DNA from: Fonticula alba ATCC 38817
Lineage: Eukaryota; Protista; Nucleariida
Assembly: GCA_000388065.2 (NCBI GenBank)
Contig: KB932201.1
DNA: 64,000 nucleotides
Strand: one strand, 5' to 3'
Part shown: positions 3,710 through 41,372 of the stretch, one piece after another
Position numbering within the stretch: position 1 is the stretch's first letter
How the letters are laid out: every line of letters begins with the position of its first letter
Translations under genes and position numbers: made by a program
Notes under the pieces: model-generated
Database searches by the model: none
Seen by the model: the letters and a program-made list of their open reading frames with translations, nothing else
Told to the model about the DNA's origin: nothing

Positions 3710-4378
3710 TTAGAAAGTGTGGTTGGCCAGGGCCTGCAGGCAGGCACGGCCGGCCTCCAGCTCAAGCTGGCGGCGAAGGTCGGCGCTGACGCCCTGGCCG
3801 GTGAGGCGGTTGAAGAGGATGATGGCCGCCGCAGAAGTGTCAATGCGGTTGGCCTCCCCCTCGGCGGGCAGGCAGATGTTGGCCAGGCGGAAGAGCTGGT
3901 AAGTCTCCATCTGCAGGGACCCGACATTCGGGAAGGCGGCGGCCATCTTGTCCAGCAGCCCGGCGTTGGCATCGGCGAAGTTGGCCGACGGCCGGCCCTG
4001 CGAGGAGTAGAACGAATCGGCGGTCAGGTCACAGGCCGGCTTCACGGAGCCGGTGGACAGGCAGCTGGTCATCTCCTTGACGAGCTGGTAAGGCGGGGGG
4101 GGGGGGGGGGGGGGAGGGAAAAGGGAAGCAAGGTCAGCACGGATCGCAGGGAGGAAAAAGGGCCCAGGGAGCGTGCACCGACGAACCAGATCCGAGAGGC
4201 CCTTGTGCGGCATCTCAAGCGGGGAGAAGGAGTAGGTAAACTGGCCGTCAGCATCGACGCCCTGGCAAACCAGAGAGCTGCCCTCGGAGTTGACAACCAC
4301 GGTGCCGGGGTCGACATCGGTGACAATCGACCCAGCCGAACCCAGACTGTGTGAAGCGTAAGAGGATGGAGCGAGAGG

Positions 4379-32687: not shown

Positions 32688-34272
32688 NNNNNNNNNNNNN
32701 NNNNNNNNNNNNNNNNNNNNNNNNNNNNNNNNNNNNNNNNNNNNNNNNNNNNNNNNNNNNNNNNNNNNNNNNNNNNNNNNNNNNNNNNNNNNNNNNNNNN
32801 NNNNNNNNNNNNNNNNNNNNNNNNNNNNNNNNNNNNNNNNNNNNNNNNNNNNNNNNNNNNNNNNNNNNNNNNNNNNNNNNNNNNNNNNNNNNNNNNNNNN
32901 NNNNNNNNNNNNNNNNNNNNNNNNNNNNNNNNNNNNNNNNNNNNNNNNNNNNNNNNNNNNNNNNNNNNNNNNNNNNNNNNNNNNNNNNNNNNNNNNNNNN
33001 NNNNNNNNNNNNNNNNNNNNNNNNNNNNNNNNNNNNNNNNNNNNNNNNNNNNNNNNNNNNNNNNNNNNNNNNNNNNNNNNNNNNNNNNNNNNNNNNNNNN
33101 NNNNNNNNNNNNNNNNNNNNNNNNNNNNNNNNNNNNNNNNNNNNNNNNNNNNNNNNNNNNNNNNNNNNNNNNNNNNNNNNNNNNNNNNNNNNNNNNNNNN
33201 NNNNNNNNNNNNNNNNNNNNNNNNNNNNNNNNCATGTGTGAGCATATGCCTCGCCCTCCCTCCTGGATGCCCACGCCCCTCCTTGACCTGCTGCGTAAAC
33301 GATTTGCATCGCGTTGTCCCCCCCCCCGGGCTTTGTGCTCGTGCATGCGCATCCGAGAGCCGAGCACAAGAGGAAGTACACACACACACACATTGGATCA
33401 GGGGAGGGGGGGGGGGGGGGGGGGGGGGGACAGGTGGGAATGTGGCTTTATTTTTGGGGATAATATACAGCGGGGATACTTGTGTGAAGGGTGCTGTTCA
33501 GGAAGGAGCAGCCACCTATGGGGCGGCTCCCCCTGCCAACAGCACAGGACACCAAGCCCTCCAGTTAAAGCCAGAGAGATGTGATGAGAGGGGGGGGGGG
33601 GGACAGGGTGGGAAAATGGAAGAGAGCCCGAAGGGGGGCTGGCATCTGGGCATGTGTCTGCGTGCGTGTGCTTACGTGAGTGCGCGCATATGCCCAGACA
33701 CATGCACACGCCCGCGTCAACATGCGGGGTCGATCTTCTTGCCATGGCCAGGAGAGGAGAGGGCAACACACATGCTTTTCGCCTCGGCCATGTGGCGAGC
33801 GCACCATGGGAGACACATCCACCATGAAAGGCCCTGGCGTCTGGTTTCTCACCCCCGAGGCAGCGGTCTGACGATGTGGCAGATGCCTGAGCAGCGGGCG
33901 AAGAAACCATTTGAACCGGGAGAAGTGGATGAGAACCCCATGATGAAGCCAGCATGCGGGGCATTTCCCCGAGAACCCCGGCCGGCCTTGCGTCAGACAC
34001 ATCTTCGACGCACGGACCATGATGCCGGTGGACCCTGTACTTGCCGACACAGACACGGGGGAAAAACACAGCACCGCGCACGCAAACACACGCACGCGCG
34101 CGCTCACATTAAGGTATGCACCAGCGCGCGCGCGCGCGCGTATGCGAGCATGTGCGTGCCTGGCTGTGTTTGCATGTCTCAGAGGCTGGGTGCATATGCG
34201 CGCGTCAGGGAACGGGCGCCACACACACACGCACACACACACACACACACGGCCTCAGGCGCACGGGCACAT

Positions 34273-36150
34273 TTAGTGGCTGGCCATGTCGACGGCAGCC
34301 TCGAACATGGTGCGGCCCTGGCGCTTGGCAGTCCGGGCGGACAGCGCCTCGCCAGACACCTCGGCCGAGTAGGCAGCCGCCGACTTGGTGTCGAAGCGGT
34401 TGTACTCGAAGTCGGTGCCGAAAATGCCATCACGCAGCTCGTAGTCCAGCTCCTTACCAATGAGGGCGAAGTTCTTCGCGGCCTCGGTGGCATCAACGCC
34501 TGTGTCGAAGCGTACGCGCACCAGGCCAGAGGTGCACATGGTGGGAGAGTTCCGAGGGGCGGGGCCAGCGAGCGTTTTGTCAGTCATCCGTCGGAGGCAT
34601 GAGGAGCAAGAGGACGGGCAGCCCCGAATGGACCGGCCCTCCGGGGGCTCTCGATATCTCCTCCTTGGCTTTCTTCCGGCTCGCCTTTTCCGGGGAGAGC
34701 CTCGTGCCGTTGCCGGTTTCTCTTTCTCTCTCTCCCCCCCCCCCTTTTCCTTGCGCATCGCGCGAGCAAGGGAGACCGCATGCGAAACCCTTGGCGCACC
34801 ATCGACGATGAACTGGGCAGTCTGGCCGAGAATACCGTGCGGGGACTCGGGCTTGCCGAGCAGCGACACATGCAGGTTGGTGTACATCTCCTGCATGAGA
34901 CCCTTCTCGACCTTGGTACGGGCGGTCACCTGCCAGACCTCGGTCCGGACGGACAGGCGCCAGCGCCCGTCAATGTGCTCGAGGTCAATCTCGGCCTCGG
35001 GAAGCTCCAGCGAGCCGACCGGCAGCTGCTGGCCATTGAGGAAGGCACCGAAGCCGGGGTCGAAGCCGAGCACATGCGACCCGATCAGGAACCCGAGGCG
35101 GCCCATGTAGGTGCCCTTCAGCGCCTCGAGGCGGATGAAGTGGGCGTTCACCTGGAAGGTCTTGTCGGAGATGATGTTGTAGCTGTGCCCGGAGCGACCC
35201 TCAAAGTAGTACTGGCGGCCGTGGAAGGCCGAGAAGTGGGGATCCTGCTCGCCGGAGCCGTCAGGGATGGAGGAGCAGTCGCTGGTCCGGCGGCAAACCT
35301 TGGGGCTACCGCTGCAGCTGTACACCATCATGCCATTGGACACGCAGACCGCCACATCGGTGCAGGTGATGGAGTTGCTGTTGGTGAAGCAGTCGCGCTC
35401 GTTGCGGAAGCAGGACACCATCTCGCCAGCCGGGCAAGAGCACTCCCGGACGATCGGCTTGCTGGTGGGCTTGGGCTTGGAGGGCTTGCTGGTGGGCTTG
35501 GGCTTGGAGGGCTTGGTGGTGGGCCGAGGCTTGGACGGCTTGGTGGGCCGGGGCTTGGAGGGCTTGGTGGTGGGGGTGGGCTTCGGCACCGCGGTCGGGG
35601 TGGGCTTGGGCTTGGAGGGCTCGCTGGTGGGCTTGGGCACCGAGGTGGGCGTGGGCTTGGGCTTCGAGGGCTCGGAGGTAGGCTCGGGCGGCGGGGTGGG
35701 GTGCTTGCGAGACTTCTTGGCGCGCTTGCGGGCCTTCTTGGCCGCCTTCTTGGCGGCCTTGCGCTTGCGCTTCTCCTCCTTCTTGCCCTCGTCGTCCTCG
35801 TCATCCTCCTCGTCCTCCTCGTCCTCCTCCTCTTCCTCCTCCTCCTCCTCCTCCTCCTCCTCTTCCTCCTCCTCCTCGTCCTCCTCCTCGTCCTCCTCCT
35901 CGTCGTCGTCACGAGGACGGCGCTCCTTGCGCGCCTCGGCGGAAGAAGCGCCCGTCTTGGCGGCGGCGCCCGTCTTGGCGACCTTCTGATCGGCGGACTT
36001 GGCCTCGACAACGGCGCCGGCCTCATCGGAACGGGCCTGGCGCTCGATCTCGGCGGCCTTCTGCTCCTGGGGGATGATGGCGGCGTCGGCGTTGGCGGCG
36101 GCCACCATCATCATGGCGGCCGTGGCGGCCATCATGAGCTTCTGGGACAT
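34273..36150 (-). CDS. Secreted extensin-like protein with Cys-rich and VWD/Root_cap-like C-terminal domain (~525 aa); exons 36150-34800, 34499-34273
   Basis: Signal-peptide-like N-terminus (MSQKLMMAATAAMMMVAAANA), D/E tract, K/A tract, PTSKPSKPKP repeats, 8-Cys segment, then DPHF..F.G..YYFEG...YNIISD...VNAHF, HGILGQT and DYELRDGIFGTDF..NRF. Intron GTGCGC...CAG; CDS 1578 nt. Confidence 0.88.
   Translation of the reverse strand: MSQKLMMAATAAMMMVAAANADAAIIPQEQKAAEIERQARSDEAGAVVEAKSADQKVAKTGAAAKTGASSAEARKERRPRDDDEEEDEEEDEEEEEEEEEEEEEEEEEEDEEDEEDDEDDEGKKEEKRKRKAAKKAAKKARKRAKKSRKHPTPPPEPTSEPSKPKPTPTSVPKPTSEPSKPKPTPTAVPKPTPTTKPSKPRPTKPSKPRPTTKPSKPKPTSKPSKPKPTSKPIVRECSCPAGEMVSCFRNERDCFTNSNSITCTDVAVCVSNGMMVYSCSGSPKVCRRTSDCSSIPDGSGEQDPHFSAFHGRQYYFEGRSGHSYNIISDKTFQVNAHFIRLEALKGTYMGRLGFLIGSHVLGFDPGFGAFLNGQQLPVGSLELPEAEIDLEHIDGRWRLSVRTEVWQVTARTKVEKGLMQEMYTNLHVSLLGKPESPHGILGQTAQFIVDGAPRVSHAVSLARAMRKEKGGGEREKEKPATARGSPRKRRAGRKPRRRYREPPEGRSIRGCPSSCSSCLRRMTDKTLAGPAPRNSPTMCTSGLVRVRFDTGVDATEAAKNFALIGKELDYELRDGIFGTDFEYNRFDTKSAAAYSAEVSGEALSARTAKRQGRTMFEAAVDMASH
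35455..35700 (-). repeat. Coding tandem repeats of (K)PTSKPSKP(K/R) units
   Basis: Repeated gggcttgggcttggagggcttgctggt-type units on the + strand. Confidence 0.9.
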
Positions 36151-36376
36151 CTGTGGCGACAAACGAATGAGTCAGTGGATGGAGGCCGCCAGGCGAGAGG
36201 GAGACGGGGAGGGGAGGAAGGACGAGCCAGCGAGCGACTCTGAGATGGAGAGAGAGAGACAGCAGCGAAGGAGGAAGAGGCCGGTGAAGGAGGCATCGGA
36301 GGAGGGATAGGAGCCACCATTGGGGGGAGGATCCCCCCGAGGGGGGGCATCAAACAATGTGTCGGGGGTCGCGCAC
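36151..36376 (-). other. Probable 5'-UTR intron immediately before the ATG of the secreted protein
   Basis: AAG|GTGCGC donor at 36376; CACAG acceptor abutting the ATG at 36150. Confidence 0.55.
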
Positions 36377-36937
36377 CTTGCTGGCTGTGCTGTGTGAGGG
36401 AGTTCGCTGCGATTGAGCGATCTCGGTGTCTTCCACGAGGGAACCCTTGTCGATTCGGTGCGGCCGAAAAAGGAGAGAGAGAGGGGGGGGAGGGGCGAGA
36501 AAGCAGTCGGAGAGGGAAACAAGCCTGAAGATGAGTTTGCACCTACAGGGGATGAGCAAAGTCCCAAGGGAGGGGACCAAGTGAGCTGCTTAAATAGGGT
36601 CTTTGAGTTTGGAGCAGCCAACTGGCACGTTGGTTGGCTTCACCCGTGGAGAGGCAACCCCTGGAGCCGGGGCTGTGAGGGACAACGGCTGCCGGGGAAA
36701 GGGTGTGGATGGGTAGCCCCACACGGGTCAGAGACACTTGCGGTCCATGGTCGAGGGGGACCGAAGGGGAGTATTGACACACACACACACAGAGAGAGAG
36801 AGAGGGAGAGAGAAGGTGAGAAGGATAACCGCCAAGAAGGGCAGCGATGCATCGGGGTCGCGAGACGCCGCTGTCCCGGGACATCAGCATCCTTGCGATG
36901 CGTTGTTTCTGACGGGAAGAGGGGAGCGAGGGAGGAT

Positions 36938-39239: not shown

Positions 39240-41372
39240 NNNNNNNNNNNNNNNNNNNNNNNNNNNNNNNNNNNNNNNNNNNNNNNNNNNNNNNNNNNNN
39301 NNNNNNNNNNNNNNNNNNNNNNNNNNNNNNNNNNNNNNNNNNNNNNNNNNNNNNNNNNNNNNNNNNNNNNNNNNNNNNNNNNNNNNNNNNNNNNNNNNNN
39401 NNNNNNNNNNNNNNNNNNNNNNNNNNNNNNNNNNNNNNNNNNNNNNNNNNNNNNNNNNNNNNNNNNNNNNNNNNNNNNNNNNNNNNNNNNNNNNNNNNNN
39501 NNNNNNNNNNNNNNNNNNNNNNNNNNNNNNNNNNNNNNNNNNNNNNNNNNNNNNNNNNNNNNNNNNNNNNNNNNNNNNNNNNNNNNNNNNNNNNNNNNNN
39601 NNNNNNNNNNNNNNNNNNNNNNNNNNNNNNNNNNNNNNNNNNNNNNNNNNNNNNNNNNNNNNNNNNNNNNNNNNNNNNNNNNNNNNNNNNNNNNNNNNNN
39701 NNNNNNNNNNNNNNNNNNNNNNNNNNNNNNNNNNNNNNNNNNNNNNNNNNNNNNNNNNNNNNNNNNNNNNNNNNNNNNNNNNNNNNNNNNNNNNNNNNNN
39801 NNNNNNNNNNNNNNNNNNNNNNNNNNNNNNNNNNNNNNNNNNNNNNNNNNNNNNNNNNNNNNNNNNNNNNNNNNNNNNNNNNNNNNNNNNNNNNNNNNNN
39901 NNNNNNNNNNNNNNNNNNNNNNNNNNNNNNNNNNNNNNNNNNNNNNNNNNNNNNNNNNNNNNNNNNNNNNNNNNNNNNNNNNNNNNNNNNNNNNNNNNNN
40001 NNNNNNNNNNNNNNNNNNNNNNNNNNNNNNNNNNNNNNNNNNNNNNNNNNNNNNNNNNNNNNNNNNNNNNNNNNNNNNNCCCACCCATCCACACACACAC
40101 ACACACACCAATCTCCAGTATCCTCGGTTCCTTTCTACGCAAAGACGCCAGGCACATTCGCGCTTCCGAAGAAGCGAAGGATGGCACACCCCATGGAAGT
40201 GGTCTTGGGAAGACATTTCCGAAAGGAGCCAGACATTCTGTCCGGTGGCTTTGAGCGATTGGGCCGTCTGGGCAGGCTCTAGCGAAGGCACGAAGGCGCG
40301 CCCTCCCCCGTGCGAAACCGATAGAACTGGCTGACATGATCCAGCTACCCACAACGGCCACATATATGGACGTCCGAAAGATCATCGCCGAGCGGCATGC
40401 TTCCACCCAGGGAAAACAGCATGACCATCCATCTCTTGGCTTGGGCACCTCCCATTGCCCCCGGTCGAGGGGCTTGAGGAAGGGCACCTTGCTTCCCACC
40501 TGGGCCTCGGGATGGTCTCACACCAGGCGAGCAATGTGAAAGCCGACGAATTCGTGGCCGGATCTCGGTGACAGAAAGAGAGGAGGGAAAGGAGGGAGGT
40601 ACCGAACATGGAATCTATGGGTATATATTGTGCAAACAAGTGCGGGATGCTCATCCACACAGAGAGAGAGAGGGGGGGAGGGAGGGAGGGAGGGGGGCAG
40701 AGAGAGAGAGAGAGACACACACACATACACACGCATGGCATGTCAGGCCAGTGAGCGAGGCAGTCTCGGGCTGTACGCACAAGGACGCAGGGCGGCGAGA
40801 GACGGCAGACAACAGGAGGGAGGAGGAGATGGAAAAGCCGAAGCCGGACCAGCCAAGCTTGAAGACAAAAGGAGCGGGGAGAAAATATACAATGTCGAGG
40901 GCACGTGGGGCACGTGGAGCAATCCAATGCAAGGTGGAAGAGACTTGGCGTCGATGGACAGAGGGGGAGGCGAGGAGGAGGAAGCAAGACACGCCTTCTT
41001 GCGGAAGGTACCAGCCGCTGGGTGCGCCCCGAAGGGAGGAAGAGGGAGAGAGAGAGAGAGAGAGAACTCAAGGACAGAGGCCCGCCGGCAGTGCTGGGAT
41101 GCACACCGCGCGGGAAAAGAGAAGAAGGGGAGAGGCAGCGCAGAAAACACGCAGGCCTGCGAAATGATAATGATACAATGTGTGTGTGGTCGTGTGTGAT
41201 GCGTGTGATGCGTGTGGTCGTGTGGGTGGGTGGGCGCGCGGACAAGCGGACAGCCGGGCGGGCGCGCGTGCCGGACAAGACACAAACACGCGGGCGCCCA
41301 GCCCAGGGCAGGGCAGGGCCAATCCCGCGGAACCCAGCAACACATGGAGCCGGCGTTGGCCGTGCCGAGCCG

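What the first reader, a model, noticed from the sequence alone, without database searches (positions are those of the whole stretch)
34273..36150. Plant root-cap/extensin-like secreted matrix protein in an opisthokont protist
The layout is signal peptide, acidic tract, basic tract, Pro/Thr/Lys extensin-like repeats, Cys-rich segment, then a domain reading DPHFSAFHGRQYYFEG...YNIISD..FQVNAHF...HGILGQT...DYELRDGIFGTDF..NRF. From memory this parallels plant root-cap/LEA-related extensin proteins (DPRFxGxDGxxFYFHG...CLVSD..LHINAHF...VHGVLGQT...Y....LF.TDC...RF), which also carry Pro-rich and Cys-rich N-termini and are related to the von Willebrand D fold. If the host is a sorocarpic amoeba such as Fonticula, this is a candidate stalk, spore-coat or extracellular-matrix component, possibly acquired horizontally or retained from an ancient family (inference).
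Basis: partly seen in the sequence, partly recalled or inferred. Interest (0 to 1): 0.78.

Follow-up and report, generated by a model that had tools for sequence, protein, structure and literature searches.

The report
Secreted root-cap/VWD-domain protein of an amoeba
This is a real, transcribed gene for a secreted, mucin-like protein whose end domain belongs to the same family as plant root-cap proteins and animal mucin/von Willebrand D domains; that family is widespread, so there is no sign of a gene borrowed from plants.

Summary
Window 34273-36150 (minus strand) is a real gene. Transcript contigs from four runs lie on it at 100% identity and splice out two GTGCGC..CACAG introns: 36151-36376 in the 5' UTR and 34500-34799, which is in frame and 300 nt long. 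The product is 525 aa, not the 629-aa read-through ORF.

The layout is as described: signal-like N-terminus, D/E tract, K/R tract, P/T/K/S repeats, a 9-Cys module, then a cysteine-free domain starting with DPHF.

The Pfam Root_cap and VWD models do not hit this protein. Even so:
- A profile of its relatives aligns to plant and red-alga root-cap proteins (hhalign 99.8%, E 5e-29, 194 columns).
- The same kind of profile finds FCGBP VWD domains (E 2e-24).
- The AlphaFold model matches VWF and mucin VWD domains (Z 17, 2.6 Å, 156 residues).
- Its D-P-H sits at the position of the GDPH self-cleavage site.

The family is very large (1881 cluster representatives), with members in bacteria, a ciliate, a red alga and plants. 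The window protein groups with four Fonticula alba paralogues and with proteins of uncultured eukaryotes, far from plants. The proline-rich spacer is not extensin-like.

Verdict: a new member of a known superfamily. It is probably an extracellular matrix or adhesion protein, possibly self-cleaving. A stalk role is untested.

The parts
36377..36539 (-). 5' UTR exon. The upstream limit is approximate. It contains no ATG.
   Evidence: Loose ends of contigs at 36152 in runs X1, X2 and X4 match the sequence ending CAGCAAG at 36377. The longest loose part is 163 nt.
36151..36376 (-). Intron 1 (226 nt, GTGCGC..CACAG), in the 5' UTR. It ends directly before the ATG.
34800..36150 (-). Coding exon: residues 1-450 plus the first base of the Gly codon split by intron 2.
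36082..36150 (-). Signal-peptide-like N-terminus (residues 1-23): Lys at position 4, a 15-residue Ala/Met/Val core, then A-D-A.
   Evidence: Sequence and hydropathy window means of 1.3-1.8. No dedicated predictor was available.
35788..35910 (-). Acidic tract, residues 81-121 (about 93% D/E).
   Evidence: 3-nt repeat.
35704..35787 (-). Basic K/R/A tract, residues 122-149.
35452..35703 (-). P/K/T/S-rich repeats (KPSKPKPT type), residues 150-233. Mucin-like spacer, not extensin.
   Evidence: Composition P 33%, K 21%, T 16%, S 15%; 27- and 51-nt tandem periodicity.
35275..35442 (-). Cys-rich module, residues 237-292. It has nine Cys: eight fit a pattern shared with the paralogues, and one is extra.
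   Evidence: pLDDT 77-90 in the deep-alignment model.
35236..35244 (-). D303-P304-H305, at the position equivalent to the GDPH Asp-Pro self-cleavage site of VWD domains.
   Evidence: The cleaved chains FCGBP D10 (begins at 4081) and RGMB (begins at 169) align from model residue 72, which is this Pro. D, P and H are at least 90% conserved in the family.
34800..35274 (-). VWD-fold / root-cap 'DPH' domain, first part (beta sandwich, no Cys), up to HGILGQTAQFIVD.
34500..34799 (-). Intron 2: 300 nt, GTGCGC..CACAG, in frame and without a stop, so it reads through as about 100 spurious residues.
   Evidence: Skipped by contigs of all four runs. Absent from all homologues. pLDDT below 50.
34393..34499 (-). 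VWD-fold / root-cap domain, last part (EAAKNF..DYELRDGIFGTDFEYNRF). It corresponds to the Pfam Root_cap stretch of plant proteins.
   Evidence: hhalign columns run to NRF. pLDDT is 97. VIA alignments reach model residue 343.
34273..34392 (-). C-terminal tail with an FEAA motif near its end, shared with paralogues, followed by the stop codon (34273-34275).

Best explanation
The gene encodes a 525-aa secreted modular protein. In order it has a signal peptide, back-to-back acidic and basic low-complexity tracts, a Pro/Thr/Ser/Lys-rich (probably O-glycosylated) spacer, a small disulfide-rich module, and a cysteine-free beta-sandwich domain of the von Willebrand D superfamily. That domain is the same one, start to end, as the 'DPH domain' of plant root-cap proteins.

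It is one of at least five paralogues in what is most likely Fonticula alba, all built as signal peptide, variable spacer, one or two Cys modules, then QDPH domain.

Most likely it is an extracellular matrix or adhesion component. The VWD-like sandwich would provide protein-protein or protein-glycan contacts. The charged and glycosylated N-terminal part would provide hydration and bulk.

The conserved Asp-Pro-His lies exactly where VWD domains cut themselves. The chain is therefore probably cleaved between D303 and P304 in the acidic secretory pathway, with the two pieces staying together through the strand just upstream of the cut.

Shown: the gene model, its expression, the homology, the fold and the position of DPH. 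Inferred: secretion, glycosylation, cleavage and the matrix role.
For: Gene model and expression: (300-nt skip in four runs, no depth over the intron).

Homologues: E 8e-67 to 5e-17; 1881 cluster representatives; F. alba H696_05825, H696_05826, H696_05827 and H696_01757, which UniRef names 'VWFD domain-containing protein'.

Root-cap homology: Brassica and Ceratopteris hits carry PF06830; hhalign 99.8%, E 4.7e-29; top Atlas shape match is a PF06830 cluster, TM 0.59 by that row.

VWD: 5 of 6 close relatives hit PF00094; 59 of 117; FCGBP E 2e-24; Foldseek: MUC2, MUC5AC, VWF, RGMB; Z 17.0, 2.6 Å, 156 residues; Z drops from 10.7 to 4.3 after the last VWD entry.

Cleavage-site equivalence: (cleaved chains align from the Pro). 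Yeshaya et al. 2024, PMC10880436, show that Asp and His of GDPH are required.

Shared architecture of the paralogues.
Against: - The Pfam VWD and Root_cap models do not hit the window protein. Its paralogues score below the VWD gathering cut-off (16.9-18.5 against 22.9 bits).
- The residue before Asp is Gln, not Gly. FCGBP has a cis Gly-Asp bond there.
- Position D+14 is Glu. The matching Q4094E mutant of FCGBP D10 cleaved only partly.
- The domain has no cysteines, C8 or TIL, so animal-type disulfide multimerisation cannot apply.
- No signal-peptide or glycosylation predictor was run.
- There are no stage-specific expression, localisation or proteomic data. The four runs are one study and two samples.
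- The host species was not confirmed directly. The window's own product was not found in the protein collection.
Confidence: 0.68

Rival explanations
1. Covalent coupling module, as in inter-alpha-inhibitor heavy chains. The DPH domain would be a C-terminal pro-domain whose Asp-Pro self-cleavage activates the new C-terminal Asp. That Asp would then be ester-linked to a matrix polysaccharide. The N-terminal charged and Pro-rich part would become covalently fixed in the matrix, and the sandwich would be released.
For: The motif is DPHF, as at the heavy-chain processing site (my own knowledge of the ITIH literature). [quoted passage not shown] Yeshaya et al. note a VWD-like sandwich with GDPH in ITIH3, ITIH5 and ITIH6. 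There are weak ITI_HC_C Pfam hits in plant relatives and an ITI_HC_C cluster among the Atlas shape matches. The layout, a variable N-terminal 'payload' before a C-terminal DPH domain, is shared across the family (Raymond 2024).
Against: The window protein has no ITI_HC_C hit. No acceptor glycan is known. In most VWD proteins, cleavage only stabilises the domain (PMC10880436). The strand before DPH is part of the sandwich in the model, which favours the two pieces staying together.
Confidence: 0.12
2. A secreted glycan- or prey-binding protein of the feeding amoeba (lectin-like, for bacterial capture or substrate adhesion), expressed constitutively and unrelated to fruiting bodies.
For: Transcripts are present in all four runs of the only study found, with no sign of a special stage. 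Relatives occur in many unicellular eukaryotes and bacteria. Raymond 2024 points out lectin-like properties of root-cap proteins.
Against: No sugar-binding site or lectin family match was found. The culture stage of the runs is unknown, so constitutive expression is not shown either.
Confidence: 0.2
3. Recent horizontal transfer of a plant root-cap gene into the amoeba.
For: Full-length homology to plant root-cap proteins. Two papers treat the DPH domain as streptophyte-specific or nearly so (PMC10796529).
Against: - Identity to plant members is only 20-29%.
- More than 100 non-plant cluster representatives score better than the first plant hit.
- In both trees the window protein lies in a starred clade with Fonticula paralogues and uncultured eukaryotes, while plants lie on the other side.
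- The gene has host-type introns, both GTGCGC..CACAG.
- The domain lacks the Cys of the plant 'DC' motif.
Confidence: 0.03
4. Not a real gene: a chance ORF in GC-rich DNA.
For: Many long overlapping ORFs exist on both strands here.
Against: Spliced transcripts, strong homologues and a confident fold.
Confidence: 0.01

Closest known systems
Fonticula alba paralogues H696_01757, H696_05825, H696_05826 and H696_05827 ('VWFD domain-containing protein' in UniRef)
   Same: 47-58% identical in the domain. Same build: signal peptide, variable low-complexity spacer, one or two copies of an 8-Cys module, QDPH, a Cys-free sandwich, and an FEAA-type motif near the C-terminus in H696_01757 and H696_05826. 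They form one clade with the window protein.
   Different: The window protein has the long D/E tract, K/R tract and KPSKPKPT repeats, plus a ninth Cys. Intron positions differ. H696_05825 to H696_05827 carry consecutive locus tags on one 542-kb scaffold; the window holds a single copy.
Plant root-cap proteins (Pfam PF06830 Root_cap; the 'DPH domain' of Prochazkova et al. 2024 and Raymond 2024)
   Same: Homologous over the whole domain. Shared motifs: DP[HR]F.G..G..F.F.G.[LI][IV]SD.[IV]NAHF, G[IV]LGQT and a closing F...RF. Variable N-terminal parts that are often Pro-rich or Cys-rich, and a secretion signal.
   Different: Only 20-29% identity. The Pfam Root_cap model does not hit. The plant 'DC' cysteine and other plant Cys are missing. 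Plants lie on a separate, distant branch of the tree. The organism is not a streptophyte.
Animal von Willebrand D domains (VWF, MUC2, MUC5AC, MUC5B, FCGBP, RGM) with the GDPH self-cleavage motif
   Same: Same fold (Z 14-17, rmsd 2.5-2.8 Å, about 155 residues). Sequence profile link to FCGBP (E 2e-24). Asp-Pro-His at the same structural position, between the first two strands.
   Different: No cysteines in the domain. No C8, TIL or E modules. Gln instead of Gly before Asp. The Pfam VWD model is below threshold or silent. There is also a C-terminal stretch, the root-cap motif region, that is conserved in this family.
Inter-alpha-trypsin-inhibitor heavy-chain C-terminal pro-domain (PF06668 ITI_HC_C)
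   Same: A C-terminal sandwich of about 240 residues that begins at an Asp-Pro-His-Phe processing site and follows an N-terminal functional part. There are weak Pfam and shape links in relatives.
   Different: The window protein has no direct match. Ester coupling to a glycan is not known outside ITIH.
Extensins and plant proline-rich proteins
   Same: A Pro-rich, Lys-rich repetitive region in a secreted protein.
   Different: No Ser-Pro(3-5) repeats and no Tyr in the repeat region, so there are no YxY cross-link motifs. The unit is KPSKPKPT, which is closer to a mucin-like or PT linker.

Membership tests
von Willebrand D domain (Pfam PF00094 / VWD superfamily) | Match to the curated Pfam model at or above its gathering score | tested here: not met
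   No hit for the window protein, whole or in pieces, even at E up to 10. Paralogues score 16.9-18.5 bits against a cut-off of 22.9. 59 of 117 relatives hit at E up to 0.01.
von Willebrand D domain (Pfam PF00094 / VWD superfamily) | VWD beta-sandwich fold | tested here: met
   VIA Z 17.0, rmsd 2.6 Å, 156 residues to the VWF D2 VWD domain. 37 VWD entries score Z 10.7-17.0, and the next unrelated entry scores 4.3. Foldseek probability is 1.00.
von Willebrand D domain (Pfam PF00094 / VWD superfamily) | Asp-Pro-His between the first two strands (the GDPH site) | tested here: met
   D303-P304-H305 is present. The cleaved FCGBP D10 and RGMB chains align from this Pro. Gly at -1 is replaced by Gln. 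Whether cleavage occurs could not be tested.
von Willebrand D domain (Pfam PF00094 / VWD superfamily) | Conserved intradomain disulfides and a following C8/TIL assembly, as in animal D assemblies | tested here: not met
   No Cys from residue 293 to the end. No C8 or TIL hit.
Root_cap / DPH domain (Pfam PF06830; Prochazkova 2024) | Match to Pfam PF06830 | tested here: not met
   No hit. Only 3 of 117 relatives hit, and the three identified (Brassica, Ceratopteris, Pyropia) are plant or red-algal.
Root_cap / DPH domain (Pfam PF06830; Prochazkova 2024) | Domain of about 200-280 residues that starts with DPH/DPR and ends with the root-cap stretch, alignable end to end | tested here: met
   hhalign of A1 against the plant/red-alga alignment A4: 99.8%, E 4.7e-29, 194 columns from DPH to NRF.
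Root_cap / DPH domain (Pfam PF06830; Prochazkova 2024) | Placement among streptophyte sequences | tested here: not met
   The window protein is in a starred clade with Fonticula and uncultured-eukaryote sequences. Plants lie elsewhere.
Extensin | Ser-Pro(3-5) repeats and Tyr cross-link motifs | tested here: not met
   Neither is present in residues 150-233. The only Pro run is TPPPEP, and the region has no Tyr.
ITIH C-terminal pro-domain (PF06668) | Pfam match and ester coupling of the new C-terminal Asp to a glycan | tested here: inconclusive
   No Pfam hit in the window protein. Weak hits in two plant relatives (E 2e-4 and 1e-3). The chemistry cannot be tested with these tools.

The most novel reading that the evidence does not exclude
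The DPH domain shared by this amoeba's secreted proteins, plant root-cap proteins and many microbial proteins is a self-cleaving 'delivery' module. Asp-Pro cleavage at its first residues would produce a reactive C-terminal Asp on the variable N-terminal part, which is then covalently tied to wall or matrix polysaccharide, as happens with inter-alpha-inhibitor heavy chains. That would give a first mechanism for the functionally unexplained plant root-cap family and a building principle for the Fonticula stalk matrix.
Probability: 0.12. Interest if true: 0.8.

Novelty: new member of a known kind. Interest (0 to 1): 0.45.

Why it matters
Three modest points.

1. The 'DPH/root-cap' domain has been used as a streptophyte marker, and two recent papers treat it as plant-specific or nearly so. 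Here it proves to be one branch of a very large family found in bacteria, protists, red algae and this relative of fungi, and a sequence- and structure-level relative of animal VWD domains. No paper in the searched library mentions root-cap proteins together with von Willebrand domains.

2. The first three residues of the domain coincide with the GDPH self-cleavage site. This gives a cheap, direct experiment for a plant family of about 2000 proteins whose function is unknown, and for this protein too.

3. Five paralogues with secretion signals, mucin-like spacers and Cys modules form a concrete candidate list for the unknown proteins of the secreted stalk matrix of Fonticula, an independent origin of aggregative multicellularity next to fungi.

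Tried and rejected
- Pfam on the whole ORF, the C-terminal 342 aa and the two exon pieces found only low-complexity noise or nothing.
- Rfam on the window found nothing.
- The word-index search with a 76-sequence alignment added nothing beyond the first search.
- The word-index search with the exon-2 product returned only low-complexity hits. It did not find the window's own product, so I could not learn whether the gene is annotated in the public record.
- Four exact look-ups of other window ORFs meant to name the source record failed. At least two of these ORFs span assembly gaps.
- Most cluster representatives carry no name, so the taxonomic range rests on a few labelled members and on gene neighbours.
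- I searched for stage-specific Fonticula expression data in papers and found none.
- Earlier notes of this scan had nothing on this gene.
- Conservation of the intron-2 position: one uncultured relative has a short intron in the same linker, while two other relatives have none there. I did not count this as evidence.
- The first, shallow-alignment AlphaFold model was poor outside the core. It was replaced by the deep-alignment model.
- Exons were used by reference, either separately or as the stop-free read-through stretch.
Full report
**1. What is at the coordinates**

The minus strand carries an ORF from 36162 to 34273, which is 629 aa as a mechanical read-through. Its surroundings are 62-70% GC and lie between assembly gaps.

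Contigs of four small public runs lie on the gene at 100% identity. The runs are from 2012 and belong to one study and two samples. No contig covers 34555-34767. In every run a contig joins 34499 to 34800 and so skips 300 nt. Read on the minus strand, the skipped stretch begins GTGCGC and ends CACAG.

Contigs that reach 36152 continue with letters that do not fit there. Those letters match the sequence ending at 36377. This defines a second intron, 36151-36376, again GTGCGC..CACAG.

The upstream exon, about 36377-36539, has no ATG. Translation therefore starts at the ATG at 36150, the first codon after the acceptor.

The coding sequence is 36150-34800 plus 34499-34276, with the stop at 34275-34273. 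That makes 525 codons, and one Gly codon is split by the intron. About 100 residues in the middle of the read-through ORF are intron. All homologues lack them, and both structure models give them pLDDT below 50.

**2. Layout** (exon-2 numbering)

- 1-23: a signal-like start. It has Lys at position 4, a 15-residue Ala/Met/Val core with hydropathy means up to 1.8, then A-D-A.
- 24-80: an Ala/Lys/Glu-rich stretch.
- 81-121: almost pure Asp/Glu.
- 122-149: Lys/Arg/Ala.
- 150-233: repeats of the KPSKPKPT type (P 33%, K 21%, T 16%, S 15%), with 27- and 51-nt periodicity in the DNA.
- 237-292: nine cysteines.
- 303 onward: a domain that starts DPHF and contains no cysteine.

'Extensin-like' is not: there is no Ser-Pro(3-5) and no tyrosine in the repeats.

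**3. Relatives**

Pfam gives nothing for this protein, whole or in pieces. The word-index search with the C-terminal 342 aa found five proteins. The best is Fonticula alba H696_01757 (56% identity, E 8e-67), which UniRef names 'VWFD domain-containing protein'. Next come three metagenome proteins at 52-53%. The last, at 36%, carries a precomputed VWD hit.

A profile of these six, searched against 1.84 billion cluster representatives, found 1881 proteins at E up to 1e-3, 673 at up to 1e-10, and 36 at up to 1e-30. Among the best are three more F. alba proteins, H696_05825, H696_05826 and H696_05827, which carry consecutive locus tags on one 542-kb scaffold. With the window gene that makes at least five paralogues. 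The window holds no second copy.

All the paralogues share one build: signal peptide, variable low-complexity spacer, one or two copies of an 8-Cys module directly before QDPH, then a Cys-free domain.

Two close metagenome relatives lie on contigs with plainly eukaryotic neighbours, including KRR1, a proteasome ATPase, MIS13, Ras, adaptin and Pus10.

Other labelled members are:
- a ciliate (Muranothrix gubernata);
- the red alga Pyropia yezoensis (E 6.6e-30);
- the fern Ceratopteris richardii and Brassica cretica (about 1e-20);
- a protein beside an ETF operon and a TetR gene, which indicates a bacterium.

**4. Is it the plant root-cap domain?**

Yes, at the level of homology. The Brassica hit carries two Root_cap domains (PF06830, E 5.7e-62) and the fern hit passes the Pfam cut-off.

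Profile-profile comparison of the Fonticula-type alignment with that alignment gives 99.8% probability and E 4.7e-29 over 194 columns. The aligned columns run from DPH through HG.LGQT to the final NRF, so they include the stretch that Pfam calls Root_cap. The best shape match in the ESM Atlas is a cluster in which 94% of members carry PF06830. The feature search also put a Root_cap cluster first.

**5. Is it a VWD domain?**

It belongs to the superfamily but is not an animal-type D assembly.

- Five of six close relatives, and 59 of 117 wider relatives, hit Pfam VWD. Most of these hits are weak.
- A 79-sequence family profile finds the FCGBP VWD domains in the PDB at E 2e-24. The plant/red-alga profile alone finds them at 1.7e-7.
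- With the deep alignment, AlphaFold gives pLDDT 88-97 for the Cys module, the sandwich and the exon-3 strand.
- This model aligns to VWF, MUC2, MUC5AC, MUC5B, FCGBP, Cypridina luciferase and RGMB at Z 10.7-17.0 (best 2.6 Å over 156 residues). The next, unrelated entry scores 4.3.
- The domain has no cysteines and no C8 or TIL partner. The disulfide-based assembly of mucins and VWF therefore does not carry over.

**6. The DPH motif**

In the solved structures of FCGBP D10 and RGMB, the chain begins at the Pro that follows the self-cleaved Asp (residues 4081 and 169). Both align from model residue 72, which is the Pro of D303-P304-H305. A short strand lies just before the motif in the model, as in VWD domains, where GDPH sits between the first two strands.

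Yeshaya et al. (PMC10880436) showed that the Asp and the His are needed for cleavage, and that Gln at position D+14 contributes. The window protein keeps Asp, Pro and His. It has Glu at D+14, and the Q-to-E mutant of FCGBP cleaved partly. It has Gln instead of Gly before the Asp.

D, P and H are at least 90% conserved across the family. Self-cleavage is therefore a reasonable but untested inference.

The same paper notes a VWD-like sandwich with this motif in inter-alpha-inhibitor heavy chains. [quoted passage not shown] That is the basis of the more novel reading offered here as a rival.

**7. Descent**

In a FastTree of 151 domains and in an IQ-TREE mixture-model tree of 54, the window protein groups with the four F. 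alba paralogues (support 96 and 94). It then groups with the uncultured-eukaryote proteins (99 and 98). Plant and red-alga sequences lie on the other side of the tree.

More than 100 non-plant representatives outrank the first plant hit. Both introns have the same host-type ends. Nothing points to recent transfer from plants.

Whether the family reached the Fonticula lineage vertically cannot be settled. Most relatives are unlabelled, and no fungal or other holomycotan member was identified or excluded.

**8. Host**

Several things point to Fonticula alba:
- the closest labelled relatives;
- the scan's own note that the genome belongs to an amoeba;
- the 2012 transcript runs.

I could not confirm this directly. 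The window's own product was not found in the protein collection.

**9. Literature**

Prochazkova et al. 2024 (PMC10796529) define the DPH domain and report only streptophyte hits. [quoted passage not shown] The extension beyond plants is therefore partly in print.

Neither paper mentions von Willebrand domains or cleavage. No paper in the library pairs 'root cap protein' with 'Willebrand'. The library is incomplete, so this is not proof of novelty.

**10. Verdict**

It is wrong or unsupported on 'extensin-like', on 'plant-like' and on horizontal origin. The matrix or stalk role remains a sensible but untested guess.

This is a new member of a known superfamily. It is of moderate interest, mainly because it links the unexplained plant root-cap family to the self-cleaving VWD domains, and because it supplies candidates for the Fonticula matrix.

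Noticed in passing
window 34500-34799 and 36151-36376: Both introns of the gene begin GTGCGC and end CACAG. Intron 2 is exactly 300 nt, in frame and free of stops. Intron retention would therefore insert 100 residues into the domain rather than truncate it. Only the spliced form appears in the contigs, and contigs cannot show rare forms.
   Followed up: partly
window 34200-34260; N runs at 32688-33232 and 39240-40079: A (GT)n/(CA)n microsatellite starts a few bases after the stop codon, and transcript contigs end there. The gene lies between two assembly gaps.
   Followed up: no
F. alba proteins P0006, P0007, P0008 (H696_05826, H696_05825, H696_05827): Three paralogues carry consecutive locus tags on one 542-kb scaffold, presumably a tandem cluster. 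H696_05826 and the metagenome protein P0004 carry two copies of the 8-Cys module.
   Followed up: partly
L002 10001-11422 and L003 10001-10735 (metagenome assembly ERZ27263088): Two family members lie on contigs with eukaryotic neighbours from one metagenome, probably from an uncultured relative of Fonticula. The called protein P0010 reads through a short intron of roughly 50 nt (GTACGC..GCTAG) lying between the GQT motif and the DY..DG motif. Its listed C-terminus is therefore an artefact.
   Followed up: partly
L005 211-1734 (JGI 3300062689): A family member (P0067) lies beside an ETF-alpha/beta and ETF-QO operon and a TetR gene, which indicates a bacterium. Bacterial members often begin GDPH.[VE]GFDGEKYDV.G.
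   Followed up: no
P0107 (Brassica cretica KAF2556455.1): This plant protein has two complete root-cap domains in tandem. The second is preceded by a Cys-rich segment much like the Cys module before the Fonticula domains; the first has only a shorter Cys-containing stretch at the start of the protein.
   Followed up: no
window 34273-36150, product: Neither the exon-2 product nor the C-terminal part retrieved an identical protein from the 15-billion-protein collection. The four paralogues were found easily. The gene may be missing or modelled differently in the public annotation.
   Followed up: partly
window 34780-36243 (+) and other ORFs: Several ORFs of 200-490 aa overlap the gene on both strands. 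They are composition artefacts of GC-rich, repeat-rich DNA and have no support.
   Followed up: no
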